From the IMG/VR virus record IMGVR_UViG_3300007513_000004, positions 1 to 64,000 of that record: DNA of 64,000 nucleotides; one strand, 5' to 3'. Positions within the stretch are counted from its first letter, which is position 1. Each line of letters begins with the position of its first letter. Position numbers and translations under genes: made by a program. Below are positions 10,866 through 60,924 of this stretch, in pieces. The notes below the pieces were generated by a model. That model was not told the origin of the DNA. It saw only the letters and a program-made list of their open reading frames with translations, and did no database searches.

Positions 10866-10870
10866 ACAAT

Positions 10871-12895: not shown

Positions 12896-12909
12896 TGTTT
12901 TCTCCCGTT

Positions 12910-13095: not shown

Positions 13096-13131
13096 TTTAT
13101 TATCCCTCTGCCTCTTCCCTCTCTATTTTAA

Positions 13132-13208: not shown

Positions 13209-13212
13209 TTAT

Positions 13213-14156: not shown

Positions 14157-14217
14157 CTTTTATTTTTTGCGAACAATAAACCTCTTCAACTAATTTATAA
14201 GCGATGCAAAAATTGAA

Positions 14218-14927: not shown

Positions 14928-15145
14928 TCTCCTATAAGTGAGAGGTCAAAAGGATCAACAAACTTTGCTTCATTTCGGTGGCTCACAGGCATTTGTGTAT
15001 CCAAAATGTCAATGATTTCATGACCTGTGATTTCATCATGTTCAAAAGAATAATCCATATCCATAACAACTTCTTGAATAGAATCTTCTGTTTGACCATT
15101 CTTCAAATAAAGTTTTACACTAACATAAACATATGTATCTTCCAT
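14924..15145 (-). CDS. hypothetical protein
   Basis: ORF with GGAG SD. Confidence 0.7.
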   Translation of the reverse strand: MEDTYVYVSVKLYLKNGQTEDSIQEVVMDMDYSFEHDEITGHEIIDILDTQMPVSHRNEAKFVDPFDLSLIGE

Positions 15146-15327
15146 CTTAATACTCCTTAGACTGCTTGCTTCTTTTCTTCAAGCGGCAAAACTTCTGTAA
15201 TATTCCATTCTGGATGGACTTCGTTAAATATTTCCATTATTCGCTTTGCGGTATAATCAATTGCCTCTATAGTGTGTTCTGTTTCAACATCGTTGTTTAG
15301 AACTTTAATTATCCATTTATTCATACT

Positions 15328-16023
15328 TCACTTAACCCCAAGAGTTTTCTTCTCTTTTTTAGAAAGAGTTTTTAATATGACCCTTTTGTTAGAGGACAAA
15401 AGTTTATCAACCCATTCTGGATTTTTACATACATAAAACGAGTAAGCGGCATCCTCCCACTCTTCCAGAGAGGCTTCAAACCATACTCCATCGGTATCTC
15501 GCCTAACAAGAAAGGTTGAAGAATCCTCGGTTTCAATAAGGTTGGGACTCTTCTCGTCTACCCTCCAAGGGGGGCGCTTATCTTTCGGCTCTCTAAGGGT
15601 TCCTTTTTCATCTACATAAAAGGTCCAGTCGCTCTTGTAAAGAGGAGACAGTCCGCCATAACCTGTGCGGTGTGGCTTTCCATCTTTAAAGACAGGGTTG
15701 CGTTCGACAAAGTCAAATAGATGTTGAAAGATATGGTCCTGCACAATACCTCTGCGGTCCATGTTCTCACATATTTCAGAATAAACCTTGTTCCAAGGAC
15801 GGCCACAATTCTTTTTTAAAAACCTAACAAGTGGCTTGAGATATTCGTTAAATTGCTTTCTTTCGTCCCACCTGCGAGACTTTGGCTTCATAGAAGAATT
15901 GCGAGGAAGGCTGTCATAGTCTCCTTCTCTCGATTTTCTTCTTGCTTCCTTAACCTCTCTATTCTTCATACTAGACCCAACGCGGGGCGTAGTAACAAGA
16001 AGCTTGTCCATATCTTTACGCAT
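15328..16023 (-). CDS. hypothetical protein (MRxDMxK...GRPWNKVYSEIC family)
   Basis: resembles a conserved bacterial hypothetical family. Confidence 0.75.
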   Translation of the reverse strand: MRKDMDKLLVTTPRVGSSMKNREVKEARRKSREGDYDSLPRNSSMKPKSRRWDERKQFNEYLKPLVRFLKKNCGRPWNKVYSEICENMDRRGIVQDHIFQHLFDFVERNPVFKDGKPHRTGYGGLSPLYKSDWTFYVDEKGTLREPKDKRPPWRVDEKSPNLIETEDSSTFLVRRDTDGVWFEASLEEWEDAAYSFYVCKNPEWVDKLLSSNKRVILKTLSKKEKKTLGVK

Positions 16024-16031
16024 TGTAAACC

Positions 16032-16235
16032 TTACTTGTAATAACCAATGCCTTTGAAGTTAAAATTACCTGAGCGCACAGCATTTAACTCTGCCTCTTT
16101 AGCCTCATCATATCGAGGGTGTTCTGTTTCTCTCTCCGAACAGTCTGTGCATATTAATCTTTCATCAAACCAAGACATAGAATACATGCTTGTTTTTACG
16201 CCACAACATTGACAAGAGCCTTTCCATTCAGTCAT
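16032..16235 (-). CDS. small Zn-finger protein
   Basis: CQCCG...ICTDC. Confidence 0.7.
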   Translation of the reverse strand: MTEWKGSCQCCGVKTSMYSMSWFDERLICTDCSERETEHPRYDEAKEAELNAVRSGNFNFKGIGYYK

Positions 16236-16244
16236 TTTATTTCC

Positions 16245-16454
16245 TTAGATTTCCGACTCTTCAAGTTCTGCTTTAAACTCTAATCTCAAACAGCCTTTTG
16301 TCATTTTAATCTTTGGCTTATCGTTATTTAGATAGCAGGCCAAAGAGCATGTTTCCACTGTTGATTTAGATCTAGATAGCCAACAAACTATCGCTTCGGT
16401 TAATTCCTCTTCTGAAAGAAGGATGGTTATAGTATTTTCTTTTATGACTTTCAT
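16245..16454 (-). CDS. hypothetical protein
   Basis: ORF. Confidence 0.6.
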   Translation of the reverse strand: MKVIKENTITILLSEEELTEAIVCWLSRSKSTVETCSLACYLNNDKPKIKMTKGCLRLEFKAELEESEI

Positions 16455-16470
16455 TGTTATATTAAATTTA

Positions 16471-16545
16471 TGGAGCCACCTGTCAGACTTGAACTGACGA
16501 CCTGATGCTTACAAAGCAACTGCTCTACCACTGAGCTAAGGTGGC
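16471..16545 (-). tRNA. tRNA-Thr(TGT)
   Basis: cloverleaf, loop TT-TGT-AA, CCA end. Confidence 0.95.
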
Positions 16546-16547
16546 AG

Positions 16548-16817
16548 CTACATTACAACTTCTTTAAGCCATTCTCTATTCTTATTCTTAAATCTAATAC
16601 TGCCATCTTTTTGCCTAACAGCGTATCCTTTCCAGAAGCAAGCCTTAAGATTTCTCAAGCTCTTTATATCAATCCGAGAAGCCATAAGGTTATTGGAACA
16701 ATGAACCATTGATTCTGCTCCAGATTTAGATGATTCAAGATTCCATTTTATTATGGAACCGCAATCTGGACATTTGTTGTTCCAGCTTTTTGGTTCATCA
16801 TCATAATTGAATGTCAT
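16548..16817 (-). CDS. hypothetical Cys-containing protein
   Basis: ORF; CPDCG. Confidence 0.65.
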   Translation of the reverse strand: MTFNYDDEPKSWNNKCPDCGSIIKWNLESSKSGAESMVHCSNNLMASRIDIKSLRNLKACFWKGYAVRQKDGSIRFKNKNREWLKEVVM

Positions 16818-17174
16818 TTAAAATTGTGCGTCCTGTCTTATCTCATCAAATACTGGCCATGAATGATAAAGATAATCCTCTACCCAGCTTGCAACACGGG
16901 GTTCGTGTCCTCCGATGTGCCACTCTGTAATCTCTTCAACTGGAAGTCCGGTTGTTCCGCAATAATTCTTGCCATTCTTCCAGTTATAAATGGTTGCAAC
17001 GAGCCCCCCTTCAAATTCAATTTGCCACTCTGCATCTGTTTTATAATTATCATACGATCCAGATGGTTCTCCAAGTTTTTCAACGAGAAGATGATAGCTA
17101 ACTGTAATCCCCCTCAAATAGCATGACCCATTAATACTTATATCTTCATCGTTTATGCGAACAATCTTAGGCAA
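16818..17174 (-). CDS. conserved-type phage hypothetical protein
   Basis: KTDAEW...VATIYNWK...EWHIGG. Confidence 0.75.
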   Translation of the reverse strand: MPKIVRINDEDISINGSCYLRGITVSYHLLVEKLGEPSGSYDNYKTDAEWQIEFEGGLVATIYNWKNGKNYCGTTGLPVEEITEWHIGGHEPRVASWVEDYLYHSWPVFDEIRQDAQF

Positions 17175-17264
17175 AACAAGCTCCTATTAAATCTCTAATG
17201 GCCGCTTTAGCCGCCTTCTTTATAATCATTGTATAAATTACAATGATTATTAATATCCAAAAAA

Positions 17265-17486
17265 TCATTTTATTATTTTCCACCCAAATGCTTGCCACAA
17301 TTTTTCATCTGGTTTACAAGCACTTTCTAGAGTTACATATCTTACGTTGCTATAAGCGGTAGGGGTTAATCTTGTTACACTAAACGGAATAGAGCTATAG
17401 TCATTTATAGACAACGGATAACACTTCTGAGTTGTTAACAGCGTTGATGGAAACTCTCCCCTTCCACAAACAACAAACCTATACAT
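17265..17486 (-). CDS. hypothetical protein (paralogue of 7799-8062)
   Basis: FVVCGRGEFP...LWQAFGW. Confidence 0.7.
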   Translation of the reverse strand: MYRFVVCGRGEFPSTLLTTQKCYPLSINDYSSIPFSVTRLTPTAYSNVRYVTLESACKPDEKLWQAFGWKIIK

Positions 17487-17611
17487 GAGCTATAGACGGC
17501 CCACGCATAGGTTGTGTGTTAATATTGATGATGCTTTATTCATGATAATGAACAATTATATATATTCCAATCATTATTACAAATGACCAAATAAAAGCTA
17601 TTAACATTAAA

Positions 17612-17687
17612 TGGCTCCCCGAGCAGGACTTGAACCTACGACAAGGTGGTTAACAGCCACCTGCTCTACCAACTGAGCTATCGGGGA
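17612..17687 (-). tRNA. tRNA-Asn(GTT)
   Basis: cloverleaf, loop CT-GTT-AA, CCA end. Confidence 0.96.
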
Positions 17688-17692
17688 ATATA

Positions 17693-17884
17693 TCAATCAA
17701 AGCGAACCTTTTTAAGTCTTGGGTCGGCCTCTCTGCCGGTTCTATAGGGAGGTCTTTCTTCTCCCAACATATATCCCAACTCTTTTTCAAGACCTGCTGT
17801 TGACTTCCCTTTCTTTTCAAATTTGCGAATCTTGCTACTGATACGCCGAATATGTTGATTTTTTCTTTGCGCTTTACTACCCAT
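17693..17884 (-). CDS. small basic protein (paralogue of 44809-44988)
   Basis: KAQRKNQHIRRISSKIRKFEKKG.STAGLEKELG. Confidence 0.8.
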   Translation of the reverse strand: MGSKAQRKNQHIRRISSKIRKFEKKGKSTAGLEKELGYMLGEERPPYRTGREADPRLKKVRFD

Positions 17885-18018
17885 GATTTTTCCTTATTAA
17901 CTAAATTTAACTGCTGGCACCCGCCCGTCAATTCTTATCCAACCAAAATAACAATTGACAACACCAACTTTCCGCTCCTTCTGTATCAAAATATTGAGCG
18001 ACAACACTTTGAATAAAA

Positions 18019-18096
18019 TGGTAGGGCTACTCGGACTTGAACCGAGAACCTACTGCTTATGAGGCAGTTGCTCTAACCTGATTGAGCTATAGCCCT
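18019..18096 (-). tRNA. tRNA-Met/Ile2(CAT), non-initiator
   Basis: cloverleaf, loop CT-CAT-AA, no GGG/CCC anticodon stem, CCA end. Confidence 0.9.
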
Positions 18097-18127
18097 ATAT
18101 AGTATGTTTTAAACATCATAAATTTTT

Positions 18128-18203
18128 TGGTGAGCCGTATAGGACTCGAACCTATAACCTAAAGATTAAAAGTCTTTTGCTCTGCCTGTTGAGCTAACGG
18201 CCC
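18128..18203 (-). tRNA. tRNA-Lys(TTT)
   Basis: cloverleaf, loop CT-TTT-AA, CCA end. Confidence 0.96.
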
Positions 18204-21587: not shown

Positions 21588-21606
21588 TTGACGCGAAATT
21601 ATTTTT
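21588..21606. repeat. 19-bp direct repeat TTGACGCGAAATTATTTTT, copy 1
   Basis: exact match to 22647-22665. Confidence 0.9.
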
Positions 21607-22627
21607 AAGAAACAGGCCCAGGTGTATCGGGATATATTCCAGAGTCATATATTGTTTTTCTTATTATTTCCATTCTTCTTTCTGCATCAATCTTCTCTCT
21701 TCTTAATTTCAGACCTACATTTTTGACCAGCCTAGATACATCGTGGGTTATCACAGGCTCTTCTCCTTTCGCAAGTTCTGCTAACTCATTCATGCCGCCT
21801 GTCTCTGCTAGGATTAAAGCATACGCAATCAATGGAGGGGGAGTTCCTGTGAGAGCTTGTGTTCTTCCGGCTAATGGCGCTCCTTCCAATGCAGCCTGTA
21901 AAGAATTAACGTCTATTTCATTAAAGTCTGCAAGACCTAATGGCCTCGCTCTGCATTGGCCTCTTCTCTTTATTGCTCCGGTCAACCCTTTGTATAAACA
22001 GTTTCTGTTTTTTCTTATGTATAAATCTATCAATTTTGTTTTTGGTCTTCCTATATTATCGAAATTCCATATTGCCAAAGCCGGTATAGCAAAAGCTGCC
22101 ATTGTTCCAAAGCCCAAGTTGAATATACGCTTCATCACAACGCCTTGTAAATGAGATTCCGGTTGGGAACTTATCCAGTCTTGCCAGCTTGAATATTCGG
22201 GAATATTCATAAACATCGAAAACAATGGAGAAGCGGAAGATATGTTGAGCCTTTGTGCTAATTGTGTGCCCAATTGTTTTCCAGCACCTTGTTCAGCCCT
22301 GTCTCTTGTGTCAAGACTTTCTTCTGCAGAAGTCTTTAAGATAAGTTCGTCTACAATGCCTGCCTCTTTAATTAATCCTCTGCTATCCAATTCGTTAGCA
22401 AGAACGATTAGTTTTTTGACAACAAGATCATCAGATGCAAAAGAGTGAACCCTACGCTCCTCCTTCGCGACCCGCTTCTTTGAGGGCTTCCTTGGTCCGA
22501 ACCATCTAAGTATCTTCTTGGGATTGGTCTTTGATACAAGAGCCCATTCTACACGGTCCTTCTTGCCTTTACCTCGCGTCGTCCTTTTCTTTCTTACAAG
22601 CTTTGATTCTTTTATCATATCATTCAT
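21605..22627 (-). CDS. shared-leader family protein with a basic N-terminal extension
   Basis: internal KKLIVLANELDSRGLIKEAGIVDELILKTSA after about 70 aa. Confidence 0.8.
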   Translation of the reverse strand: MNDMIKESKLVRKKRTTRGKGKKDRVEWALVSKTNPKKILRWFGPRKPSKKRVAKEERRVHSFASDDLVVKKLIVLANELDSRGLIKEAGIVDELILKTSAEESLDTRDRAEQGAGKQLGTQLAQRLNISSASPLFSMFMNIPEYSSWQDWISSQPESHLQGVVMKRIFNLGFGTMAAFAIPALAIWNFDNIGRPKTKLIDLYIRKNRNCLYKGLTGAIKRRGQCRARPLGLADFNEIDVNSLQAALEGAPLAGRTQALTGTPPPLIAYALILAETGGMNELAELAKGEEPVITHDVSRLVKNVGLKLRREKIDAERRMEIIRKTIYDSGIYPDTPGPVS

Positions 22628-22681: not shown

Positions 22682-23458
22682 CTATTGCTTTTCCCAGTTA
22701 ACATCTTTTAATAAAATTCCATCTATCCTAGTGTTGCTAAGTGGTTTGTGCAGCCTGCTCCCTCTATCGTCAATATAGTATGCAGTATTTCCATCCGGCC
22801 TCATATACTTTCTCCAGCCTTTAAATCTATATTCAGTTAGATCGCCAGTCTGTGCTTGGGGAGGACTTTCCTCTACCGGCTTTAAGTCATCAGGTAGTCT
22901 CTGTATGAGGTTATCATAACCTGGCCTTCCCTTTTTTATAGAAACAGTCTTCGTGGCGTTTCCCGCTGAATCAAAGAAGCTTGTATTTATCTTTCCTGAG
23001 GTTATTAAAAACTTTGGGCCACCTTTCTCTGGAGGCACATAAACATACTTATAAGGATCTCCAGCTGTATTTATATAATACTCTTCGCCTAAACCATATC
23101 GTCGCAAAACCTTTGCCGTATAAGAACTTGGGCCTATTGCCGTCTTAATCATTCTATAGTTTCTATCTGCTGCCAACTTTTTCCCAGCCTGGAGTCTATT
23201 CTGCGTTTGGGTAATACACTTGTTGTATTGAGGAGGGCCCTTTGTAAGACCCTTGGCTGCACAATGATCTTCTTCCTTTGTCGTATAGGAGGTTGAACCT
23301 TCGCCAAGGTTTGGACTCATACAGCCGTTTAAATCATTGTTCCAGACCATTGGTGGCTTACAATATGCGCTCTTTATTATTGCATCTAAATAGTCAGCTT
23401 CTTTTGTTAAGCCTTTGCTATCCAGATGTGTTGCCAATTTAATTAATTCATTAATCAT
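22682..23458 (-). CDS. shared-leader family protein
   Basis: MINELIKLATHLDSKGLTKEADYLDAIIKSA. Confidence 0.85.
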   Translation of the reverse strand: MINELIKLATHLDSKGLTKEADYLDAIIKSAYCKPPMVWNNDLNGCMSPNLGEGSTSYTTKEEDHCAAKGLTKGPPQYNKCITQTQNRLQAGKKLAADRNYRMIKTAIGPSSYTAKVLRRYGLGEEYYINTAGDPYKYVYVPPEKGGPKFLITSGKINTSFFDSAGNATKTVSIKKGRPGYDNLIQRLPDDLKPVEESPPQAQTGDLTEYRFKGWRKYMRPDGNTAYYIDDRGSRLHKPLSNTRIDGILLKDVNWEKQ

Positions 23459-27182: not shown

Positions 27183-27452
27183 CTATCTGCCCAACTGCGA
27201 GAAGACCCCACCGGTTTGTCCCAATCGAGAAAAAGACATTCCATCACCGATAGGTCCTGGAGCAGTTTCTTCAACCTCGCCCTCAGCCCCTACAAGCCAA
27301 CCAGGACCTTCGGCCCCTTCTACTGGGTTTCCATCAATATCTAATGGAATTCCTCCAGCAAATTTAAAAATTACTTTATCAATAACATCAGCTTCTTTCA
27401 CAAGGCCTCTGCTATCTAGTTCGCTGGCTAATTTAATTAATTCTACAATCAT
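27183..27452 (-). CDS. shared-leader family protein (possibly frame-disrupted)
   Basis: MIVELIKLASELDSRGLVKEADVIDKVIFKFAG. Confidence 0.75.
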   Translation of the reverse strand: MIVELIKLASELDSRGLVKEADVIDKVIFKFAGGIPLDIDGNPVEGAEGPGWLVGAEGEVEETAPGPIGDGMSFSRLGQTGGVFSQLGR

Positions 27453-28855: not shown

Positions 28856-28932
28856 TGGCACGCCCGATAGGATTCGAACCTATGACCCTCGGCTTAGAAG
28901 GCCGATGCTCTATCCAACTGAGCTACGGGCGC
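28856..28932 (-). tRNA. tRNA-Arg(TCT)
   Basis: cloverleaf, loop CT-TCT-AA, CCA end. Confidence 0.96.
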
Positions 28933-41132: not shown

Positions 41133-41708
41133 CTAAAACTTTGAAGGGAACATATTGATAGAGGCCTGCTTTCTCGTATCCACGAACACAACGCGACTCC
41201 TGCATCCTCGACAGATATGGCCATTGGGCCTCTTTGGCATACGAACCTTCCAGCCCTCGGCGGCACAACCAGTGCAAGTCCACTTGACTTTCTTTTCCTG
41301 CTTCCGACGCAGACCTTCCGTATTGTAGTTATGACAACGATGGTTCTTATACTCTCCGGTGATGTTAGTCATCATCTGCTGGAAACGTCGGGTATGACCC
41401 TTTTCGTTATACTTGTGAACCAAGAAGGCATGAACCATTTCGTGAATCAGAGTTCTCTCAATCTTAGCAAGGTCATAGCCCTCATTTCGAAACAACTTAT
41501 CGGACAGGTCAATCTTGGTAGGCTCAAGATTTTGGCCTCTCGCATAACGGTTGGCAAAAGTTTCGACAAGCCCGCTTCGCTTGTAACGGCAGTAGCCTGC
41601 CGTAGTGGTCATACGGTTATTCCATACGACCGGGATATCGGGAATCTCGCTATTGAAATGCTCATCATTCAATCGGATAAACATTGCTCTGATGTTGGGT
41701 CTGGTCAT
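41133..41708 (-). CDS. SprT-like Zn metalloprotease with C-terminal Zn ribbon
   Basis: WNNRMTTTAG...LIHEMVH...GH...F; CTGC...CRGC; promoter 41727-41755. Confidence 0.88.
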   Translation of the reverse strand: MTRPNIRAMFIRLNDEHFNSEIPDIPVVWNNRMTTTAGYCRYKRSGLVETFANRYARGQNLEPTKIDLSDKLFRNEGYDLAKIERTLIHEMVHAFLVHKYNEKGHTRRFQQMMTNITGEYKNHRCHNYNTEGLRRKQEKKVKWTCTGCAAEGWKVRMPKRPNGHICRGCRSRVVFVDTRKQASINMFPSKF

Positions 41709-44454: not shown

Positions 44455-44530
44455 GGGTCCATAGCTCAACAGGCAGAGCGCCGGACTTTTAATCCGTAGG
44501 TTCAGGGTTCGAGTCCCTGTGGACTCACCA
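44455..44530 (+). tRNA. tRNA-Lys(TTT), second copy
   Basis: cloverleaf, loop CT-TTT-AA, CCA end. Confidence 0.95.
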
Positions 44531-44544
44531 TTTATCAAACTTTT

Positions 44545-44629
44545 GCCCGAGTGGTGGAATCGGTATACACAGCAGACTTAAAATCTGCCGCCTTTGGGCT
44601 TGCCGGTTCGAGTCCGGCCTCGGGTACCA
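44545..44629 (+). tRNA. tRNA-Leu(TAA)
   Basis: class II cloverleaf, loop CT-TAA-AA, CCA end. Confidence 0.95.
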
Positions 44630-50234: not shown

Positions 50235-51176
50235 CTACTTGCGCTGGCCCTCCCCCTTGTCGATGAGGTAGCGCATGACCTTGCCCGCTTCATTCGCGGC
50301 CCGCTGAATCACGGTAGGGTCATCCTTGAGAGCCTTCCGCCAGTTGGCAAGGTAGGCCACATGGTTGTCCATCAAACCCTCTCGCTTGACTCCCAGATAG
50401 GCGCATGTGAACGCCGCGCCAATCTCGGCAACCAACTCCTCGTAAGCATACGCCTCCGAGCCGAAGCCCGTGAACTTGACGATGCCATCCCGGTTGAGTC
50501 GGTCCTTTGCACCTGACCAGTGGGCGTGCTCATGGATGGTAGTGGCCCAAAAATCAGCAACAGTGGTGAAGGCTCCGGCCTCGGGCACCATGATGTAGTC
50601 CTCGCGAGGGGAGTAGAAAGCACGCCCGCCGCCCGTGCGGAAATCCGCGTCGATACCTTTGACAAGTGCAGCCGCCGCCTCATGGCCCACCTTTGGGTCA
50701 ACCTCTGAAATCTCGGCAGACGGTAGGGGGTTCGTCGTTTGCTGGTTGTTGAAAGTGTACGAGCTTCCAAATCCGATGAACTTTGTGGACCCCTTGACCA
50801 AGAGACTCGCGCCACAGGGCTTGCACTTTTTTGCAAATCCACATGGGCGGCCACAACTGTTGCAGGCCAGCTTCGGGAAGAAAATAGGAGTCCCCTTCTC
50901 GCCTTTGCGCACGTAGTTGCCGCTCTTTTGCCACTGGCCAAACCCGGCCCAACGGTTGTCACCAAACTGAACCCCGGCCATCATCAGCATAAAGCCATTG
51001 AAGTTTCCGCCGTAGGCGCGGCCCGTCAGGATGTTGATTGGCATCCCACCAGCAAGGGACCTATCCCACGGCATAATCCAAGGGGTGCCGTCCTCGGGCG
51101 GGTTGTCGAGGGCTTCGATAATCTGCGCGGCTATACGCTCGCACGTCTCTTGAATCTTGTCGTTGGGCTTGCTCAT
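50235..51176 (-). CDS. ardC: ArdC-family antirestriction / ssDNA-binding protein with an inserted Zn-ribbon
   Basis: WIMPW, N..TGR.Y.G.N, VRKGEKG, RAFYSP..D.I, HEHAHW, YAYEELVAEIGAAF; promoter 51225-51253. Confidence 0.9.
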   Translation of the reverse strand: MSKPNDKIQETCERIAAQIIEALDNPPEDGTPWIMPWDRSLAGGMPINILTGRAYGGNFNGFMLMMAGVQFGDNRWAGFGQWQKSGNYVRKGEKGTPIFFPKLACNSCGRPCGFAKKCKPCGASLLVKGSTKFIGFGSSYTFNNQQTTNPLPSAEISEVDPKVGHEAAAALVKGIDADFRTGGGRAFYSPREDYIMVPEAGAFTTVADFWATTIHEHAHWSGAKDRLNRDGIVKFTGFGSEAYAYEELVAEIGAAFTCAYLGVKREGLMDNHVAYLANWRKALKDDPTVIQRAANEAGKVMRYLIDKGEGQRK

Positions 51177-52430: not shown

Positions 52431-52708
52431 ACTTATATGCTTATATATTTTTGACATTTGCCAGCGCATGTTGGCACGGCGCGTGCCACCGCCTACGACG
52501 CATTTCCTGCTCAGGGTATATTTTATTTTGTTTTCTATACCCTATAAAAGAAAAAACCAGCGGTTTGCTGGTTCTTGTATAAGGACTATATAAGGTAGAT
52601 TATATAGTTTATGTTCTTAGGGGATTATTTAAATTACTTATAGGGTTATTGTTATTGGGAACTTACTGTTCTCTCATACTCTAATCAAAAACAATCCGCT
52701 TTTTATTA

Positions 52709-53189
52709 TTATATAATTTGCTTATTATAAAAGAAGTTATAACCAAAGCTTAAAGCCTCTTGTATTTCCCTGCCACCCAAAACATTAGAAATTGCATTGC
52801 CTTTTTTATCATTATATTTCCATCCAGCTTGTGATTCTCTTGTCCAATCATTAATGGCCTGCCAAACAGGCTGTACAGGACTCGCTTTAGCTGCAAGTAA
52901 AGCTTTAGCCTGCTCTTCTGAGGTTGGCTTCAAAGTTATCTTGAAAAGTCCTGGTCGAACTCTTTCCATTGTAACAGGAATATCCAGTTTTGCTCCAGCA
53001 AGAATTTCTTTAAGCTTTGCAACAACTCTGGTGGGTCCTTCGCGCTGCTCACGACGTTGCATACGCTTTTCGGCTTTTGGAGACCTGTCTCTGTTGAGCC
53101 TTCTTAACCACGGCATCCAAATAATCAGCTTCTTTGTGAAGGCCTTTCTTATCCAAATGTGTTGCTAGTTTTATTAATTCGTTAATCAT
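52709..53189 (-). pseudogene. frameshifted shared-leader gene
   Basis: leader ORF from ATG 53189 stops at TGA 53051-53049 (46 aa); body continues in the +1 frame to 52709. Confidence 0.7.
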
Positions 53190-53478
53190 CTTTCTTTTTC
53201 CTTGTCGATTTTGCTATGGCCTTATCATCGCATGGTATACAGAGGTTTCCCGTTGGCGTACTTTCGTGTTCCGTTTTGCATCCGCATGTGGGACAATCGC
53301 GATAATGATATCCTTCATCCATGCCTCCGCGATCATCGTCATACCAGGGATCTCGATATCTTCTTCCCCAGATATCTCTTGGGAGAGCTTTCTTTATAAC
53401 TGCATCAATATAATCAGCTTCTTTGTGAAAACCTTTATTATCTAAATGTGTTGCTAGCTTTATTAATTCGTTAATCAT
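53182..53478 (-). CDS. shared-leader protein with Zn-finger cargo
   Basis: MINELIKLATHLDNKGFHKEADYIDAVIKKA...CPTCG...CIPC. Confidence 0.85.
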   Translation of the reverse strand: MINELIKLATHLDNKGFHKEADYIDAVIKKALPRDIWGRRYRDPWYDDDRGGMDEGYHYRDCPTCGCKTEHESTPTGNLCIPCDDKAIAKSTRKKKDD

Positions 53479-53780
53479 TTTATAATCTCCGTGTAATCCG
53501 GTATCGTGTCTTGACCTATTAAGTTTTCCCCTCTCCAAATAATACCAAGCTCTGCCTGCTTTTCTTTAAGATTCTTTCCCGTATCATTTGGCACAAAGGC
53601 TTGCGGTGTTCGACCATATTGAAATGTTCCAACAACAACTGTATTCCATACATTTTTAATACGCACATTTTTAATGGGTGCTTCCGCATTCTTTTTAATC
53701 ACAGCATCAATATAATTAGCTTCTTTGTGAAGGCCCTTCTTATCCAAGTGTGTTGCCAGTTTTATTAATTCATTTATCAT
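53475..53780 (-). CDS. shared-leader protein
   Basis: MINELIKLATHLDKKGLHKEANYIDAVIKKNA. Confidence 0.85.
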   Translation of the reverse strand: MINELIKLATHLDKKGLHKEANYIDAVIKKNAEAPIKNVRIKNVWNTVVVGTFQYGRTPQAFVPNDTGKNLKEKQAELGIIWRGENLIGQDTIPDYTEIIK

Positions 53781-53792: not shown

Positions 53793-54959
53793 TTATTGGG
53801 CGCTTGCCCAAAACATATCGCCCTCATACTCTTTCAAGGCTTCGCCCAAATCTTCATCCTCATCGGTCCTTGCGGCTATTGCCTCCTCCATACTTGAGTA
53901 TTGAGGCTCTTGAGGTCTTCCGGTTCCGAAAAGTTCGTTAACATCTTGAGTAGAAATCGGAGAAGGTTGACCCATAGGAACTGCAGAAGGAACCGGAGGC
54001 GGAGGCGGAGCATCTTGGACCATTGCTGCCAAACTTGGAATCTCATCCCACTTCTTCCAGCCAGGCCAGCCTGTTGTCCAGACTAAATGCCTGGCATTAA
54101 TATCTTCTGAAACCTTAGCCGCTATTTCCTCTACGGATAATTTGGCCTGACCGCTTGGGCCATGATAATGCATTGTGGCTGTCTCCGGAATAGGCGGAGG
54201 GGCTGCTCCTTCTGGGGCGGCTCCCTCTGGGGCTGCAACCGCAGCTGCACCTCCGGCGGCCATCACGGCTGCAACAGCATCTTTTTCTGACATTTCTTTT
54301 TCCGCCATAAGCTGAGAAGCCCTTACGGCCTGCTCTTCGGTTAAGCTCTCTCTCTCCATTAAATCTTTAATTTTTTCTGCTGCTTTGTATTGTTCTTCGA
54401 AAATATCAACTAGGACATTCCAAGCATCAACCCATCCATTTTCATTGTCCAGACCGGTCAACATTCTGGTCGCCGCATTGGCTCCCCAGTAATCATAGAT
54501 GTTATCTTGAAAATATTTTTCATCTATTTTAATATTTTCAAAATCTCCTTTCATCATCTTTTTCATTCTTACATCAAAGATTTCTCGAACAAAGGTTCCG
54601 CCTCTCGCCTTCCCGGCCGGAAAAGAACCAGGGCCGTCTATAAGGTCAGCCTGAGTCAAAGTTGTTCTGAAAGATTCCCAAAGATCTCCGGCAGGGGTGG
54701 CCGTTAGGTCTGTTACTCCCATTGTCTCAAAAACAGACATAGCATCTTCGCTTGCTTTGCTGACGCCAACAGCGGCAGTGGTTCCTGCTACGGCTGCGAT
54801 GATAGCTGCCGTCAGGTATGACACTCCAAAAATGGTTGCAGTTATCGGTTCTGCCATTTTTATCAATGCATCTATCTCATCAGATTCTTTCATCAATCTT
54901 CTTGAATCTAATTCGTTTGCAATTTTAACAAGCTGTTCCAAGGAAGCATTGTTTAACAT
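53793..54959 (-). CDS. shared-leader protein with hydrophobic segment and GYF_2 (DUF4339)-like domain
   Basis: EQLVKIANELDSRRLMKESDEIDALIKMA; YHGPSGQAKLSVEEI...LVWTTGWPGWKKWDEIPSL between Pro-rich linkers. Confidence 0.8.
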   Translation of the reverse strand: MLNNASLEQLVKIANELDSRRLMKESDEIDALIKMAEPITATIFGVSYLTAAIIAAVAGTTAAVGVSKASEDAMSVFETMGVTDLTATPAGDLWESFRTTLTQADLIDGPGSFPAGKARGGTFVREIFDVRMKKMMKGDFENIKIDEKYFQDNIYDYWGANAATRMLTGLDNENGWVDAWNVLVDIFEEQYKAAEKIKDLMERESLTEEQAVRASQLMAEKEMSEKDAVAAVMAAGGAAAVAAPEGAAPEGAAPPPIPETATMHYHGPSGQAKLSVEEIAAKVSEDINARHLVWTTGWPGWKKWDEIPSLAAMVQDAPPPPPVPSAVPMGQPSPISTQDVNELFGTGRPQEPQYSSMEEAIAARTDEDEDLGEALKEYEGDMFWASAQ

Positions 54960-55026
54960 GACCTTTGTCTCCTAGTTGTTAACTCAAATATTACCATGTC
55001 CATTTGACTTTACCTTCACCTTTAAT

Positions 55027-55074
55027 CCACTTTATTACCACTTCAACCCACTTTGCTCCACTATTTACCACCAC
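55027..55074 (-). promoter_or_regulatory. five AGTGG/GGTGG direct repeats at 10-11 bp period (MraZ-box-like)
   Basis: CCAC[T/C] on + at 55027, 55038, 55048, 55058, 55068. Confidence 0.7.
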
Positions 55075-55279
55075 ATAGAAATTATGGGCGAGTTTATCTT
55101 TGATAATCAAAGGCAAATAGATGTATAAAGAGGGTCTGTTCTCTGAAATTCCATTTTTATATAAAAAGATGTGTAATAAAAACCAATGATTTTCAATAAA
55201 AAATTAGTGATGAAAAAAGATGCTTATTGAAACGAATAAGAGATTTTTAAAAAACATATAATTTATATAGTGAAACGAA

Positions 55280-55474
55280 TCAATCAAAGCATCCTATTTC
55301 ATCTGCCCTAATTAGTAATTTCATATGCTGATTTGTGGTCAAACCTTTCTTTCCCAGAGAAATATTTTCATAGCTTTGCTCTATCCTTGGAAGAAGTATT
55401 TTGCATTCCGGTTCGCGGGGCGGTTCACAATAACTAATCATTACAAAAAAGAATATAGATAATTTAAAATTCAT
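55280..55474 (-). CDS. small exported/lipoprotein-like protein
   Basis: hydrophobic N-terminus followed by Cys. Confidence 0.55.
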   Translation of the reverse strand: MNFKLSIFFFVMISYCEPPREPECKILLPRIEQSYENISLGKKGLTTNQHMKLLIRADEIGCFD

Positions 55475-55480
55475 TTAAGA

Positions 55481-55948
55481 TTAAACATCTTCGGGGTTTA
55501 TAAGGCTCCATATATCCTGCCATCTTGCGCTGGGCTTTTGATGATCAGGAGGAACAACATCGTAAACCTTTCGGCCTTCCTCTATTTCTTCCATCTGTTC
55601 TGGACTAACCTTTACCACGGATGCTTCGCCAGAATATGTTTCCTCATCATCTAAAACGACTATATGAAAGTTCATATCTCCAGGCGGCTCTTTGTCTAAC
55701 TCGTCTATAGCCTTTTGTATTTCTGGCCAATTTTCTGCAAGATAACTTCTGTATTCCTCTGGAGTTCTACGCCTTTCTGATCGATCTTTCTTCTTTTCTC
55801 TATATTCATCAAGGTCAACTAATTCGCCAAAGCCTTCTGGACTATCCAGTTCTGTCGAAAGCTTTACAAGGGAATCCAAAAGATCCGCTTCTTTCAGAAG
55901 ACCTCTGCTGTCCAGTTCGTTTGCTATTTTAATTAATTCCTTTAACAC
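55481..55948 (-). CDS. shared-leader protein
   Basis: MLKELIKIANELDSRGLLKEADLLDSLVKLS. Confidence 0.85.
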   Translation of the reverse strand: MLKELIKIANELDSRGLLKEADLLDSLVKLSTELDSPEGFGELVDLDEYREKKKDRSERRRTPEEYRSYLAENWPEIQKAIDELDKEPPGDMNFHIVVLDDEETYSGEASVVKVSPEQMEEIEEGRKVYDVVPPDHQKPSARWQDIWSLINPEDV

Positions 55949-56751: not shown

Positions 56752-56777
56752 AAAAGCAAGGCTTCGGCCTTGCTTTT
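56752..56777. terminator. bidirectional intrinsic terminator
   Basis: AAAAGCAAGGC-TTCG-GCCTTGCTTTT. Confidence 0.9.
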
Positions 56778-57669: not shown

Positions 57670-57897
57670 TCACGTATCGACCAAATCATGGGTTTCATTT
57701 TCCTGCTCTGTATCTTCAAGCATTTCAGACAGATTTTTAAAATAATATAGCTCATCACCAAGGCTTTGCTCGCAATCTGATTCATCTCTTTCAAGACTAT
57801 GAGATATCTTTTTAATTATAACATCCAAATAATCAGCCTCGACCTGCAAGCCGTTGCTGTCTAAGAAGTCTGCAAGTTTAATTAGTTCACTTATCAT
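57670..57897 (-). CDS. shared-leader protein (short)
   Basis: MISELIKLADFLDSNGLQVEADYLDVIIKKIS. Confidence 0.8.
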   Translation of the reverse strand: MISELIKLADFLDSNGLQVEADYLDVIIKKISHSLERDESDCEQSLGDELYYFKNLSEMLEDTEQENETHDLVDT

Positions 57898-57899: not shown

Positions 57900-58934
57900 T
57901 TAGCCTACCAATGTACCTTCTTCTGAAATATTAGTCGATTGCTTGGACTTATCCACAATTGCGGCTTCTTCTTCGTTTAGATTATAATTAGTCATATGAA
58001 TGAGCCTGTCTGGATCAAGCTTAAACGAAGAAGAAGAATCTTCATGCTCTTCAAACAGCGTTGCAATCTCCTCAGTGGTTAGAGGTCGGTTCTCCCTATC
58101 TCCCAAAGCCTCATTTAAAGTACTTAATTCATCTGGCGCTTTAAGCTCTGAGTTGGGTGTCGATAAGAACTCCTTCCCAGCAGAGGTAACTCCCAATACG
58201 GTGATATGCCAATGAGGCCCTGCCTTAGCCCTTTCTTCCTCGGACAGCTCCATTCTCCTTTCGTCAATTGGATCTAATCTGACCAAATTATTCTTTATAA
58301 TATATTGTAGCATTCTAGATATTTCTTCATCACTATTGCTTACAATGCCATAGTCTATAGCTTCCCCATCCTGATGAGAAGATATACCGCCTGCATCTTC
58401 TATTATCTTTGCAGAAATCTCCATCCCCTCTGGTTTGATAGCATAGCGATGCTCCGGAGGTTGCGCATATTCTTCCCATACAGAAATCAAGTCTTGTGCG
58501 ATAGATCCAGCACTAGCATGACAGCTTGCACAGTTGGAGTAAAGATTTGCTATATATTTGCTTCCTGTATTTTCAGTTCCCAAAAGACCATTCGCAACAC
58601 CGTCTGGTCCTCCATTCTTTTTCCACAGCCCAAGCATGGCCTGGACCTGTCTAAGGGGAGGTCTTAACCCACTTGTTACTATAGGTTCTGAAAATCCCAA
58701 CAACTCTGATAGCTTATCCATTATTAGCGCGAAACCTTGGGCTTCCTGAGTGACATTCAAATCAGAACCACTAAAGGAAACCTCTGTATCTTCCCAGTTG
58801 CCAGAGTAAGCTCCGGCTGCTGGTAGACTCATTTTTTCAGAATATTTTTTAATTATTTCATCTAAACAATTAGCTTCGATAATCAAATTTTTATTATCTA
58901 AAAAATCAGCCAACTTTATCAGCCTGCTTAACAT
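57900..58934 (-). CDS. shared-leader protein with peptidase M15/LAS-type domain
   Basis: MLSRLIKLADFLDNK...; TSGLRP, SSHQDGEAID, PHWH. Confidence 0.8.
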   Translation of the reverse strand: MLSRLIKLADFLDNKNLIIEANCLDEIIKKYSEKMSLPAAGAYSGNWEDTEVSFSGSDLNVTQEAQGFALIMDKLSELLGFSEPIVTSGLRPPLRQVQAMLGLWKKNGGPDGVANGLLGTENTGSKYIANLYSNCASCHASAGSIAQDLISVWEEYAQPPEHRYAIKPEGMEISAKIIEDAGGISSHQDGEAIDYGIVSNSDEEISRMLQYIIKNNLVRLDPIDERRMELSEEERAKAGPHWHITVLGVTSAGKEFLSTPNSELKAPDELSTLNEALGDRENRPLTTEEIATLFEEHEDSSSSFKLDPDRLIHMTNYNLNEEEAAIVDKSKQSTNISEEGTLVG

Positions 58935-59539
58935 TAGCTCTCCAAGAGATCCCCTAAGTCAACAGTCTGGTGTGTTGATCGCTCTCTCTTTGACCCACCT
59001 ATTGTTCTCTCAAGCTCTTTTATCGTCGCCCCAGTTTGCGCCATGGCCTCTCGGGCTCTAGCCTCAGCCTCTTGTTGCTTGAGGTCTCCTTGTGCCTTAT
59101 AGGGGTCAAGGTCATCATATTCTGCTTCTTTTTCTGCACCTGCATCAGGAGGAGAGCCTTTCTCCAACACTAGTTCTTTTTTTCCAGAGAAGAAATCTAA
59201 AACAGCTTTGACCGTCGCCGTATGTTCATCGGCACTTAACATGTCCGTTAGTTCGTCAATGTCCGTTTCTGCGTCTTGGCCAAATACGGGAGTTCCGCCG
59301 ACAATCCATCCCGCCACTTTTCGAGCATCGGCCATCTTTGCGTTCTCTCGGGCATAGAAGTTATGCATTTCTTCGCCAGCCTCTGCTCCGGGAGCTTCCA
59401 AAGACTTAGCGTGTTCTTCATGCTCCATCCCCTCGTCTCTTCCCGCTGTCTTTCCCAATAATGAATCAAGATAGTCAGCTTCTTTTCTCAAGCCTTTCTT
59501 GTCCAATTCATTTGCTAGTTTTATAAGTTGTTTAATCAT
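58934..59539 (-). CDS. shared-leader protein
   Basis: MIKQLIKLANELDKKGLRKEADYLDSLLGKTA. Confidence 0.85.
   Translation of the reverse strand: MIKQLIKLANELDKKGLRKEADYLDSLLGKTAGRDEGMEHEEHAKSLEAPGAEAGEEMHNFYARENAKMADARKVAGWIVGGTPVFGQDAETDIDELTDMLSADEHTATVKAVLDFFSGKKELVLEKGSPPDAGAEKEAEYDDLDPYKAQGDLKQQEAEARAREAMAQTGATIKELERTIGGSKRERSTHQTVDLGDLLES
59442..59529. repeat. 88-bp near-identical leader DNA, copy 1
   Basis: one mismatch versus 60364-60451. Confidence 0.9.
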
Positions 59540-59548
59540 TAGTTCACC

Positions 59549-59884
59549 TTATCTATATTTAATAATCTTAAGATTTGAGTAATCACCGCCCCCGCGAGCT
59601 GTGGTGTCGGTGCCAATAAGATTCTTTGGACCTTCAAAATTTTCATAGCTTCCATCAGACGAAGTAAACTTGTAATTGGGAGGCTTTGCATAAGGAGTTG
59701 ACATCAAAGTGCCAATCCTCTTTGCTTTTGGACACGGATCCTCTCCTGGGCATTGATCACTTGTGGTAATATCATCAACCAATGTCCTAGCCGTTTTCTT
59801 AATCACAGCATCAATATAATTGGCCTCTCTATGAAGCCCCTTCCTATCCAAATGTGTTGCTAGCTTTATTAATTCGTTAATCAT
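59549..59884 (-). CDS. shared-leader protein
   Basis: MINELIKLATHLDRKGLHREANYIDAVIKKTA. Confidence 0.85.
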   Translation of the reverse strand: MINELIKLATHLDRKGLHREANYIDAVIKKTARTLVDDITTSDQCPGEDPCPKAKRIGTLMSTPYAKPPNYKFTSSDGSYENFEGPKNLIGTDTTARGGGDYSNLKIIKYR

Positions 59885-60461
59885 TCTGCTCAGGCCCCCA
59901 GTTTGGATCAGTCCACGATGGATGACCAGTCTCTTCCTTGGGCCACACCTTTGCCTTAACTCCAGAAACTGACACAATTAGACCTTCCTGGGAGGCAAAA
60001 TAAGGCAGTCCATCGAGCCACCGACCGTCCGCTCCTCTGTATTTCTTAGATGATTTTCCGACAATCCTATCCCACATTGGGTCAGACCATGGTTTGGAAT
60101 TTCCTTGTGTATCTGTAAACATTATTGTTGACTCCAAAGGCGATGCTCTTCCCTTATATTTTACATCATACAAAGCTTGCGGAAGCTCTACTTTTATTTT
60201 GTCCTCATCTACCCCAAAGTGTGCTGCGCCCAATGGCCGAGCGTTTTTGAAAACGGAGCCAAAAACATTAAAGATAGACATGGGAGAATCAAGTTTGGCA
60301 TTCCCCAGGTCCACAACCTTTGGGTTTGGATGCTTTTTTTCTACGGGGAAGCTCACCCTGGCCCCCGCTGTCTTTCTCAATAATGAATCAAGATAGTCAG
60401 CTTCTTTTCTCAAGCCTTTCTTGTCCAATTCATTTGCTAGTTTTATAAGTTCATTAAGCAT
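59877..60461 (-). CDS. shared-leader protein
   Basis: MLNELIKLANELDKKGLRKEADYLDSLLRKTA. Confidence 0.85.
   Translation of the reverse strand: MLNELIKLANELDKKGLRKEADYLDSLLRKTAGARVSFPVEKKHPNPKVVDLGNAKLDSPMSIFNVFGSVFKNARPLGAAHFGVDEDKIKVELPQALYDVKYKGRASPLESTIMFTDTQGNSKPWSDPMWDRIVGKSSKKYRGADGRWLDGLPYFASQEGLIVSVSGVKAKVWPKEETGHPSWTDPNWGPEQND
60364..60451. repeat. 88-bp near-identical leader DNA, copy 2
   Basis: one mismatch versus 59442-59529. Confidence 0.9.
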
Positions 60462-60924
60462 TTGCGACCCCTCCTGCCGAGTCAGTGTTTGCTGCGGCCA
60501 ATAATCCGAAGCTGGTTCTAAGATTTGCAATAAATGGCTCAACCTCTGCACCGCCATGAAGCCTCCCGGCATCAGACAGCCAATACCCTATGTCATCATC
60601 TGTCAGCGGTGGATTATAATCATCTTTTGCGCTATTAAAAGCAGCTTTTGTTTCTTGAAGAGTAATTAAGGATGCTCCCAAGTCTTTTTCTTTGTAAGAT
60701 ATGTTTCCACCTGCACCCTCAGGTACAATATGGCCTTTTATTATATTCCTTTTAAGCTTAGGAATAACATTTTCACCAACGAAATATTCTATTAATTCAA
60801 GAAAACTCTGTTGCTCATCTGACATGCCGGCGTGCTTTTTAAGCATGTCATCCAAATAATCAGCCTCTTTGCACAAGCCTCTGCTATCCAAAAAGTCCGC
60901 CAATTTTATAAGTTCATTAATCAT
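60454..60924 (-). CDS. shared-leader protein
   Basis: MINELIKLADFLDSRGLCKEADYLDDMLKKHA. Confidence 0.85.
   Translation of the reverse strand: MINELIKLADFLDSRGLCKEADYLDDMLKKHAGMSDEQQSFLELIEYFVGENVIPKLKRNIIKGHIVPEGAGGNISYKEKDLGASLITLQETKAAFNSAKDDYNPPLTDDDIGYWLSDAGRLHGGAEVEPFIANLRTSFGLLAAANTDSAGGVANA

What the first reader, a model, noticed from the sequence alone, without database searches (positions are those of the whole stretch)
59442..60451. Leader DNA is near-identical between genes and builds its own translational coupling
Seen: 88 bp with one mismatch shared by 59442-59529 and 60364-60451, with cargo diverging right after KTAG. Leaders at 23458, 53189, 53478, 53780 and 59884 form a second closely similar DNA subfamily. 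Leader starts (ATGATTAA, ATGCTTAA, ATGA, TAATG) supply or overlap the upstream gene's stop at 53189, 53478, 58934, 59884 and 60461. Inference: leaders are homologous-recombination handles for cargo exchange and array expansion, and any inserted unit is automatically coupled.
Basis: partly seen in the sequence, partly recalled or inferred. Interest (0 to 1): 0.6.

Follow-up and report, generated by a model that had tools for sequence, protein, structure and literature searches.

The report
Shared hairpin tag, swappable phage genes
An uncultured marine jumbo phage puts the same undescribed 30-residue helical-hairpin tag on about twenty unrelated accessory proteins, and close relatives gain, lose and replace these genes at or just before the tag-coding DNA.

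Summary
Window 59442-59529 and 60364-60451 differ at 1 of 88 bases, and all five start/stop overlaps exist.

The "leader" is a protein module, a confidently predicted alpha-hairpin (pLDDT 95-98). It has no Pfam or PHROG match. It hits 3,263 metagenomic protein clusters, mostly at residue 1 but also at C-termini and inside proteins. This 223-kb myovirus fragment carries 22 copies, 12 of them in one co-directional array at 53.0-61.7 kb.

The near-identical pair reflects a recent DNA event. They share 27 of 28 same-residue codons, against a median of 56% in 105 leader pairs.

Relatives with about 96% identical flanks carry different genes between the same landmarks. Six of seven breakpoints lie in a leader or within 30 nt upstream of one, and three of those are inside or at a leader. 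A 486-nt in-frame indel joins a leader end to a degenerate second leader. Fourteen or more near-clonal contigs keep the order unchanged.

Overlapping starts and stops are common in these phages. Only the 8-nt overlap comes from the leader itself: ATG-ATT-AA holds TGA and TAA in the other two frames.

The tag's function is inferred. It is probably a shared docking or targeting tag, possibly for virion packaging as with T4 internal proteins.

The parts
60364..60462 (-). Tag-coding DNA (leader) of the 194-aa gene; copy 1 of the 99-nt direct repeat
   Evidence: 96% identical to 59442-59540, with an 88-nt core carrying 1 mismatch; leader profile score 66 bits
59442..59540 (-). Tag-coding DNA (leader) of the 201-aa gene; copy 2 of the repeat
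   Evidence: the same leader heads the orthologous 201-aa gene in L059, L061 and L063
60955..61743 (-). 262-aa tag-cargo gene, the first unit of the array; acidic cargo
   Evidence: a 266-aa ortholog in L059 is 87% identical at nt level
60454..60924 (-). 156-aa tag-cargo gene; its stop lies inside the next leader (ATGCTTAA)
   Evidence: absent from L059, which has a different 143-aa unit at this position
59877..60461 (-). 194-aa tag-cargo gene; ORFan cargo
   Evidence: One search found no homologue other than itself; absent from L059 and L061
59549..59884 (-). 111-aa tag-cargo gene of the 'THLD' leader subfamily; 8-nt overlap with the upstream stop
58934..59539 (-). 201-aa tag-cargo gene with an acidic cargo; conserved in relatives
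   Evidence: one sample carries a nonsense variant at window 59338
57900..58934 (-). 344-aa tag-cargo gene; the cargo is a LAS-type (VanY / T5 endolysin-like) zinc peptidase fold
   Evidence: Invariant S-x-H-x-x-G-x-A-x-D and H-W-H motifs; VIA-align Z 5-5.9 to VanXY, VanY, T5 and phage endolysin peptidases; homologues P0180-P0184 lack the tag
57670..57897 (-). 75-aa tag-cargo gene; an in-frame 162-codon deletion form of the relatives' 237-aa gene, with the junction at the leader's end
   Evidence: junction at window 57805-57815 on a shared TTAAAAAG; the relatives carry a degenerate second half-leader at the junction
55481..55948 (-). 155-aa tag-cargo gene (GTG start, 7-nt overlap with the upstream Smr-like gene); relatives carry an extra tag-cargo unit inserted just upstream
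53793..54959 (-). 388-aa tag-cargo gene; the tag follows 5 extra N-terminal residues and is followed by a hydrophobic segment and a weak GYF_2 match
53049..53780 (-). Three consecutive small tag genes (101, 98 and 46 aa) of the 'THLD' subfamily, overlapping by 4 and 8 nt; the 46-aa product is almost only the tag
22682..23458 (-). 258-aa gene carrying the tag and a ~60-aa Cys-rich linker; orthologues in relatives with 95% nt identity lack SD, tag and linker (an indel of about 280 bp)
27183..27452 (-). 89-aa tag-cargo gene outside the array
21605..22627 (-). 340-aa protein with an internal tag copy (residues ~71-100) after a basic N-terminus
   Evidence: 38 bits

Best explanation
The repeated 'leader' DNA encodes a ~30-residue alpha-helical hairpin: helix 2-14, a K-G-L turn, then a second helix. 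L5, K7, A9, L12, D13, E20, A21 and D25 are invariant or nearly so. It is an undescribed protein module, common in uncultured marine jumbo myoviruses. It is usually the first 33 residues of small, mostly acidic, otherwise unrelated accessory proteins, but it also sits at C-termini and inside proteins.

Shown:
- Conservation is at the protein level, because synonymous sites diverge freely between copies.
- The gene units turn over between close relatives, with junctions inside the tag-coding DNA or in the 10-30 nt before it.
- One pair of tags (59442-59540 and 60364-60462) is a very recent duplication or conversion. It brackets a 922-bp block that relatives lack.
- The usual opening ATG-ATT-AA contains TGA and TAA in the other two frames, so an upstream ORF in either frame can end on the start codon. 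About a third of junctions do this.

Inferred:
- The ~100-bp tag-coding repeats act as patches of homology for unequal or ectopic recombination and gene conversion. This works like T4-type PeSL repeats, except that here the repeat is coding.
- The hairpin is a shared docking or targeting tag that takes diverse cargos to one destination. My favoured destination is the virion interior, for co-injection, as with the capsid-targeting leader of T-even internal proteins.
For: Module:
- The profile of 15 copies hits 3,263 representative clusters at E<=1e-3 and 596 at E<=1e-10. Most hits are at residues 1-33 of proteins 38-970 aa long.
- Among the 212 copies in the top 150 proteins, 128 are N-terminal, 22 C-terminal and 62 internal.
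- AlphaFold2 with 118 sequences gives an alpha-hairpin with pLDDT 95-98 over residues 1-30.
- No Pfam, PHROG or PDB sequence match was found.
- Copy numbers: 22 in this contig, 5-16 in five related jumbo-phage records, and arrays of 8-10 copies in other viral contigs.

Protein-level constraint and a recent DNA event:
- The 60461/59539 pair has identical codons at 27 of 28 positions with the same residue.
- The median over 105 pairs is 56%, and pairs with equal amino-acid identity show 50-77%.

Turnover:
- Gene order differs between the window and L059, L061 and L063.
- Nucleotide-level junctions were mapped.
- The tag is present or absent on the 22682-23458 cargo and on the LAS-peptidase cargo family.

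Coupling:
-. Of 79 leader starts, 25 read ATGATTAA. 95% have a stop in an alternative frame within 11 nt.
- 20 of the 59 starts with an upstream ORF nearby overlap its stop: the ORF ends at +1, +4, +7 or +8 in 10, 2, 1 and 7 cases.

Context consistent with injected or anti-defence cargo:
- A LAS peptidoglycan-peptidase cargo.
- An ArdC-like anti-restriction gene next to the array at 50235-51176.
- A tagged CCA-adding/HAD RNA-repair-like enzyme.

T-even internal proteins share only an N-terminal packaging leader and sit in hypervariable loci (PMC12373910; PMC2839356).
Against: - No experiment or virion proteome links the tag to capsids.
- C-terminal, internal and multi-copy tags, and near tag-only proteins of 38-57 aa, fit a cleaved packaging signal poorly.
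- No head genes or prohead protease could be recognised in this 67%-complete contig or in five relatives.
- Three of seven breakpoints lie just upstream of the leader rather than in it, and one indel is unrelated to leaders.
- Near-clonal populations show a fixed array.
- No recombinant joints appear in public contigs.
- 1- and 4-nt overlaps are equally common at non-leader genes.
Confidence: 0.55

Rival explanations
1. This is an ordinary paralogous gene family in a hyperplastic accessory region. The N-terminal domain is kept by selection on the protein. The 99-nt identity is one recent local duplication. Breakpoints fall at gene edges only because other events break genes and are lost. On this view the leader DNA has no special role in recombination, and the overlaps are normal phage gene packing.
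For: - Three of seven breakpoints are 11-28 nt upstream of the ATG, and one indel lies away from any leader.
- Overlaps of 1 and 4 nt are common at non-leader genes.
- The array is invariant in 14+ near-identical contigs.
- Most leader pairs are only 55-70% identical at DNA level, which is poor substrate for homologous exchange.
Against: - Three breakpoints lie inside or at leaders, including a mosaic leader in L059 with 25% divergence in the first 24 nt and under 4% afterwards.
- An in-frame leader-to-degenerate-leader deletion exists.
- L061 and L063 part company inside a leader.
- A block absent from relatives is flanked by 99-nt direct repeats.
Confidence: 0.25
2. The hairpin is a self- or cross-associating 'sticker'. 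Proteins with two or three tags cross-link, and single-tag proteins join as clients of a phage-made protein body, either in the capsid or in the infected cell.
For: - 53 of the top 150 family members carry 2-3 copies, often one at each end of an acidic, probably disordered spacer.
- Residues after the tag are rich in E, D, S, G and P.
- Tag-only mini-proteins exist.
Against: Nothing shows self-association. The top-150 list is biased toward multi-copy proteins because scores add up. In this phage nearly all proteins carry a single tag.
Confidence: 0.15
3. The hairpin binds one host hub protein, so each paralogue brings a different effector domain to the same host machine.
For: The cargos are diverse and fast-turning, the array sits next to anti-defence-type genes (ArdC-like, NUDIX, Smr, SprT-like), and the tag's acidic surface residues are highly conserved.
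Against: A peptidoglycan peptidase cargo would act outside the cytoplasm. The tag is spread over many divergent phages whose hosts are unknown. No partner has been identified.
Confidence: 0.15
4. The conserved stretch works as RNA or as a translation-initiation element rather than as protein.
For: It always includes the start codon in the array, and its 5' end is A/T-rich.
Against: - The consensus RNA structure energy is -0.15 kcal/mol, with 4 trivial pairs.
- Variation between copies is largely synonymous.
- The same motif occurs at C-termini and inside proteins.
Confidence: 0.02

Closest known systems
T-even phage internal proteins (IPI, IPII, IPIII and >30 variants) with the N-terminal capsid-targeting sequence
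   Same: A short conserved N-terminal leader heads otherwise unrelated small proteins. The genes cluster in loci that are hypervariable between related phages, and known cargos are injected anti-restriction proteins (PMC12373910; PMC2839356 citing Repoila 1994 and Comeau 2007).
   Different: From my own knowledge, the T4 leader is about 10 residues and is removed by the gp21 prohead protease. Here the module is a ~30-residue folded hairpin with no similarity to it, and it also occurs at C-termini and internally. Packaging is unproven, and no gp21- or gp23-type genes were found (those searches were inconclusive).
PeSL (promoter-early stem-loop) cassettes of T4-type phages RB49/phi1
   Same: Repeats of about 100 bp flank ORFans in hyperplastic regions. 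They provide homology for excision, insertion and replacement, and bring expression signals with the cassette (PMC2839356).
   Different: PeSLs are intergenic promoter plus stem-loop elements. Here the repeat is coding and brings a start codon with stop codons, not a promoter. Promoter- and terminator-like sites in the array are at background level.
Polymorphic toxin / Rhs / CDI cassette systems
   Same: A conserved coding segment is joined to highly variable C-terminal modules that are exchanged by recombination with cassette arrays (PMC3482391).
   Different: In those systems the conserved part is a large trafficking region on one gene, and the spare cassettes are promoter-less tips paired with immunity genes. 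Here every unit is a complete small gene with its own start. No toxin or immunity pairs are evident.
Encapsulin cargo-loading peptides and the helix-turn-helix coat-binding end of phage P22 scaffolding protein
   Same: A short terminal peptide or hairpin, usable at either end of a protein, is enough to load diverse cargo into an HK97-fold shell. This rests on my own knowledge and was not tested here.
   Different: No sequence or significant fold match was found. No shell partner has been identified for this tag.

Membership tests
T-even internal proteins / capsid-targeting sequence | A conserved N-terminal leader shared by otherwise unrelated proteins clustered in hypervariable loci | tested here: met
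T-even internal proteins / capsid-targeting sequence | A leader of about 10 residues, strictly N-terminal and homologous to the T4 leader | tested here: not met
   The module is ~30 residues and forms a folded hairpin. It also occurs at C-termini and internally.
T-even internal proteins / capsid-targeting sequence | T4-type head machinery (gp23 capsid protein, gp21 prohead protease) in the genome | tested here: inconclusive
   No Gp23 or Peptidase_S77 match in the own contig or in five relatives, one of them complete. The control genomes did not ring either, and the own contig is only 67% complete.
T-even internal proteins / capsid-targeting sequence | Proteins packaged in the head and injected | not testable with these tools
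   Needs virion proteomics
PeSL regulatory cassettes | An intergenic sigma-70-like promoter plus G/C stem-loop flanking each ORFan | tested here: not met
   Promoter-like sites: 29 against 24.6 expected. Terminator-like sites: 12 against 11.9 expected. Units overlap or are 2-30 nt apart.
PeSL regulatory cassettes | Indels and replacements between close relatives bounded by the repeats | tested here: met
   Six of seven breakpoints lie in a leader or within 30 nt upstream of one
Any curated protein domain family (Pfam-A, PHROGs, PDB sequences) | A significant profile match of the tag | tested here: not met
   The Foldseek best hit has E 2.8 and shows generic TPR- or Rop-like hairpins.
LAS metallopeptidases (VanY / peptidase M15 / T5 endolysin), for the 344-aa cargo only | Zinc ligands H-x(6)-D and H-x-H in the conserved order | tested here: met
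   H187, D194, H241 and H243 are invariant in 7 homologues
LAS metallopeptidases (VanY / peptidase M15 / T5 endolysin), for the 344-aa cargo only | The LAS fold | tested here: inconclusive
   More than 10 of the top 20 VIA-align hits are LAS enzymes over model residues 52-250, but Z is only 4.6-5.9. Foldseek's top hit is VanY at E 0.16. Mean pLDDT of the model is 59.

The most novel reading that the evidence does not exclude
The hairpin is a general address label of a large clade of uncultured marine jumbo phages. It would mark the set of proteins loaded into the virion and injected with the DNA, or sent to another single phage-built destination. Its coding sequence would double as the recombination joint of a natural cassette system, letting these phages reshuffle anti-defence and takeover effectors while keeping delivery and translation intact.
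Probability: 0.3. Interest if true: 0.8.

Novelty: new variant of a known kind. Interest (0 to 1): 0.62.

Why it matters
If the tag is an address label, one 30-residue motif would pick out the delivered or co-localised accessory proteome of thousands of uncultured jumbo-phage genes that currently have no annotation. It would also supply a ready-made tag for loading foreign proteins into such phages.

The comparative data give a second, independent example of phages using a short repeated sequence to confine gene shuffling to safe joints, after the T4-type ip loci and PeSLs. Here the repeat is a coding sequence. This makes the idea directly testable by long-read viromics and inverse PCR.

Tried and rejected
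- Complex prediction on two copies of the 40-residue tag returned 'no answer' (score 0.06). This is not evidence either way.
- GenBank/INPHARED phages gave no DNA match for the array, no tblastn match for the 262-aa protein and none for a 40-aa tag. The last search is insensitive for such a short query.
- A PrkA-like gene found only distant Thermus phages and megaphages, so no cultured relative is in hand.
- The search for related loci with the 856-aa flanking protein found only an identical IMG/VR contig and nothing in metagenome contigs.
Logan contigs break at the leaders. The 'joints' and loose ends are other leader paralogues (the sequences upstream of 53780, 53478 and 23458) or have sides under 30 nt. 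No reliable recombinant was seen, and holes in coverage prove nothing.
- Head genes (Gp23, Peptidase_S77, HK97 Phage_capsid) were not found in the own contig or in five relatives. No capsid partner could therefore be tested.
- PHROG scans identified only tail sheath, baseplate, tail fibres, lysins and replication genes.
- The ESM Atlas search with the tag gave only unnamed clusters below the trust level.
- Foldseek on the hairpin model returned only generic helical hairpins.
- An RNA structure in the leader was rejected.
- I looked for a 'scaffoldin' with repeated receptor domains among the 12 largest proteins and found no internal sequence repeats.
- The literature held no hit for the motif strings and nothing specific for leader-plus-cargo arrays in jumbo phages.
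- One top-150 family member hits the Pfam T7 capsid assembly (scaffolding) family at E 1e-4. That is marginal after 150 tests, and I did not pursue it.
Full report
**What the window is.** The 64-kb window is the first part of a single 223,402-bp contig. IMG/VR holds it as a linear virus record that CheckV rates 67% complete.
- It encodes tail sheath, T4-gp6-like baseplate wedge, tail fibres, lysozyme, ribonucleotide reductase, DnaB helicase and topoisomerase. That makes it a jumbo myovirus.
- Public runs holding the stretch are marine or seawater metagenomes from 14 studies.
- A 277,573-bp ENA contig overlaps it and runs about 106 kb beyond its end.
- No cultured relative was found.

**The observation.**
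- Window 59442-59529 and 60364-60451 differ at 1 of 88 positions. The repeat extends to 99 nt at 96%.
- The genes are on the minus strand. The two copies are the first 33 codons of a 201-aa gene (58934-59539) and a 194-aa gene (59877-60461). Their products are unrelated after K-T-A-G.
- The 'THLD' subfamily (starts 53189, 53478, 53780, 59884) is 78-85% identical. The copy at 23458 is 68-75% identical to these.
A sixth exists at the GTG start 55948.
- More than 14 contigs from other samples span the region at 99.9-100% identity, so the repeat is not an assembly artefact.

**What the leader is.** Fifteen copies align to the consensus MINELIKLAxxLDxKGLxKEADYLDxxIKK.
- A profile finds 22 copies in the contig. 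Twelve lie in a co-directional array at 53.0-61.7 kb.
- Other N-terminal copies are scattered across the contig.
- One copy is internal, in a 340-aa protein at 21605-22627.
- Two copies are C-terminal. One is on a 198-aa acidic protein at genome 71439-72035. The other is on a 784-aa enzyme with a poly(A)-polymerase/CCA-adding head and, by my reading of a D-x-D-x-T motif, a HAD phosphatase domain (genome 110494-112848).
- Against 1.84 billion representative proteins the profile hits 3,263 clusters at E<=1e-3 and 596 at E<=1e-10.
- In the top 150 proteins, 128 copies are N-terminal, 22 C-terminal and 62 internal. Most internal copies lack a methionine at position 1, so they are real domains and not fused gene calls.
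- All members examined are unnamed metagenomic proteins on phage-like contigs.
- Other viral contigs carry arrays of up to 10 copies in 8 kb. Five related jumbo-phage records hold 5-16 copies each.
- Pfam, PHROGs, PDB sequences and the ESM Atlas give nothing.
- With 118 sequences, AlphaFold2 predicts a hairpin of helix 2-14, a three-residue turn and a second helix, at pLDDT 95-98 over residues 1-30. Fold search returns only generic TPR- or Rop-like hairpins.
- The cargos are almost all unannotated. A Pfam census of 150 members finds only single hits.

**Protein constraint versus recent DNA exchange.** I compared codons at positions where two leaders encode the same residue.
- The 60461/59539 pair uses the same codon at 27 of 28 such positions.
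- The median over 105 pairs is 56%.
- Pairs with equal amino-acid identity show 50-77%. For example 59884/53780 share 28 of 32 residues but only 16 of 28 codons.
- The family is therefore held by selection on the protein, and this one pair is a recent duplication or conversion.
- An RNA-level role is excluded: the consensus structure energy is -0.15 kcal/mol.

Cluster mates of the array proteins led to contigs L059, L061/L062 and L063. Their shared genes are about 96% identical to the window at DNA level.

| Source | Gene order (sizes in aa) |
|---|---|
| Window | 262-156-194-111-201-344-75-96-NUDIX-136(rev)-91-155-388 |
| L059 | 266-143-201-344-237-96-141(rev)-NUDIX |
| L061 | 275(no tag)-201-344-237-110-NUDIX-136(rev)-84-191 |
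| L063 | 344-237-110-NUDIX-136(rev)-84-188-154 |

Junctions at nucleotide level:
- (a) About window 60940, roughly 16 nt before the 60924 start.
- (b) Inside the 201-aa gene's leader. L059 differs at 6 of the first 24 nt (it has a TTG start) and then at about 1 in 100.
- (c) Window 59550, 11 nt before that start, in L061 and L063.
- (d) Window 57805-57815, at the 'IKK' end of the 57897 leader. Here the window lacks 486 nt in frame. The relatives' 237-aa protein has a degenerate second half-leader exactly at the far junction, with a shared TTAAAAAG.
- (e) Window 57214/57215, a 478-nt insertion in L059 unrelated to any leader.
- (f, g) Window 55976 and 55947. These bracket an extra tag-cargo unit in L061 and L063, with the right end at the first base of the 55948 leader.

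L061 and L063 themselves diverge inside a leader at about codon 17. So 3 of 7 junctions are in or at leaders, 3 more lie within 30 nt upstream, and 1 is elsewhere. Leaders occupy about 12% of the compared 7.4 kb.

The 922-bp block between the two 99-nt repeats (the 194-aa cargo plus the 111-aa gene) is absent from all three relatives. A block flanked by direct repeats is what a single crossover with a circular or ectopic donor, or unequal crossing-over, would leave. That is an inference.

Two further cases show the tag being added or lost as a unit:
- The 258-aa gene at 22682-23458 has SD, tag and a ~60-residue linker that orthologues with 95% identical DNA lack.
- The 344-aa cargo's homologues elsewhere are 230-242 aa and tag-less.

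Near-clonal populations keep the array unchanged. Public contigs gave no trustworthy recombinant joints.

**Translational coupling.**
- Among 79 leader copies that begin at a start codon, in this genome and in fetched loci, 25 read ATGATTAA.
- 84% have a stop in the +1 frame and 56% in the +2 frame within 11 nt.
- 20 of the 59 starts with an upstream ORF nearby overlap its stop: it ends at +1, +4, +7 or +8 in 10, 2, 1 and 7 cases.
- The TGA follows from any second codon that starts with A. The TAA follows from Ile-ATT (or Leu-CTT) followed by Asn or Lys.
- Overlaps of 1 and 4 nt are as common at non-leader genes of these phages (gene tables). Only the 8-nt form is specific to leaders.
- Promoter- and terminator-like sites in the array are at background, with good terminators only at 56752-56777 and 52552-52576. 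Long polycistronic transcripts with coupling are therefore plausible but not shown.

**Function.**
- The 344-aa cargo has the LAS peptidase zinc ligands, invariant in seven homologues.
- Its model aligns best to VanXY, VanY, the T5 and RB49 L-alanoyl-D-glutamate peptidases and other phage endolysin domains, at Z 4.6-5.9.
- An ArdC-like anti-restriction protein sits just beyond the array, at 50235-51176. NUDIX and Smr-like genes lie within the array, and a SprT-like gene lies about 11 kb away at 41133-41708.
- A position-independent folded tag on unrelated proteins is best read as a docking or targeting module.
- Virion loading for co-injection fits three things: the peptidoglycan peptidase, the anti-defence neighbourhood, and the T-even internal-protein precedent (PMC12373910; PMC2839356).
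- It fits poorly with C-terminal, internal and multi-copy tags and with tag-only mini-proteins.
- No partner could be tested. Head genes were not recognisable, and the one complex prediction gave no answer.

**Verdict.** The coupling claim is true as a sequence property but overstated as 'automatic'. The larger finding is an undescribed and very widespread hairpin tag of marine jumbo phages. Its destination is unknown.

Noticed in passing
window 1878-2227 (-), and tRNAs at 10790-18203, 28856-28932 and 44455-44629: The phage encodes a full-length tmRNA (117 bits; tag peptide ANNNYYYEPVALAA) and nine tRNAs.
   Followed up: no
window 50235-51176 (-), in a GC-rich stretch (55% GC at 50-52 kb against 34-44% elsewhere): An ArdC-like anti-restriction protein (ArdC N-terminal domain plus zincin metallopeptidase) lies immediately downstream of the tag array. 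The region 36-52 kb is markedly richer in G+C than the rest of the window.
   Followed up: partly
genome 110494-112848 (L003:6494-8848, -): A 784-aa enzyme has a poly(A)-polymerase/CCA-adding head, by my reading a HAD-type D-x-D-x-T phosphatase motif, and a C-terminal copy of the hairpin tag. It may be a tRNA or RNA repair enzyme.
   Followed up: partly
L052 (JGI 3300007754), equivalent to window 59338: One sample's contig carries a nonsense change (Lys68 to stop) in the 201-aa tag-cargo gene. Either the gene is dispensable or this is a sequencing error.
   Followed up: partly
L057 (ENA, 1,153 bp), junction at window 60996: This short contig joins an unrelated G+C-rich ORF in frame to the last 13 codons of the 262-aa gene and then continues identically into the 156-aa gene. 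It could be a real replacement variant or an assembly chimera.
   Followed up: partly
window 54960-55480: A 521-nt stretch without a convincing ORF lies inside the otherwise tightly packed array. No Rfam match was found there.
   Followed up: partly
L022:9044-10144 and database proteins P0001, P0004, P0016: In other phages, adjacent tag-cargo units are fused into one ORF with the internal Met retained. This suggests that loss of the shared stop/start junction creates multi-tag proteins.
   Followed up: partly
genome 130966-135464 (L004:6966-11464, -): A cluster resembling PrkA/YeaG serine kinase, YeaH and SpoVR, shared with Thermus phages and megaphages.
   Followed up: no
genome 223240-223402 (contig end): A tandem 12-nt repeat (ACAGGAGATCTT / ACAGGAGATGTG) runs into the contig end. 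This probably explains why the assembly stops there.
   Followed up: no
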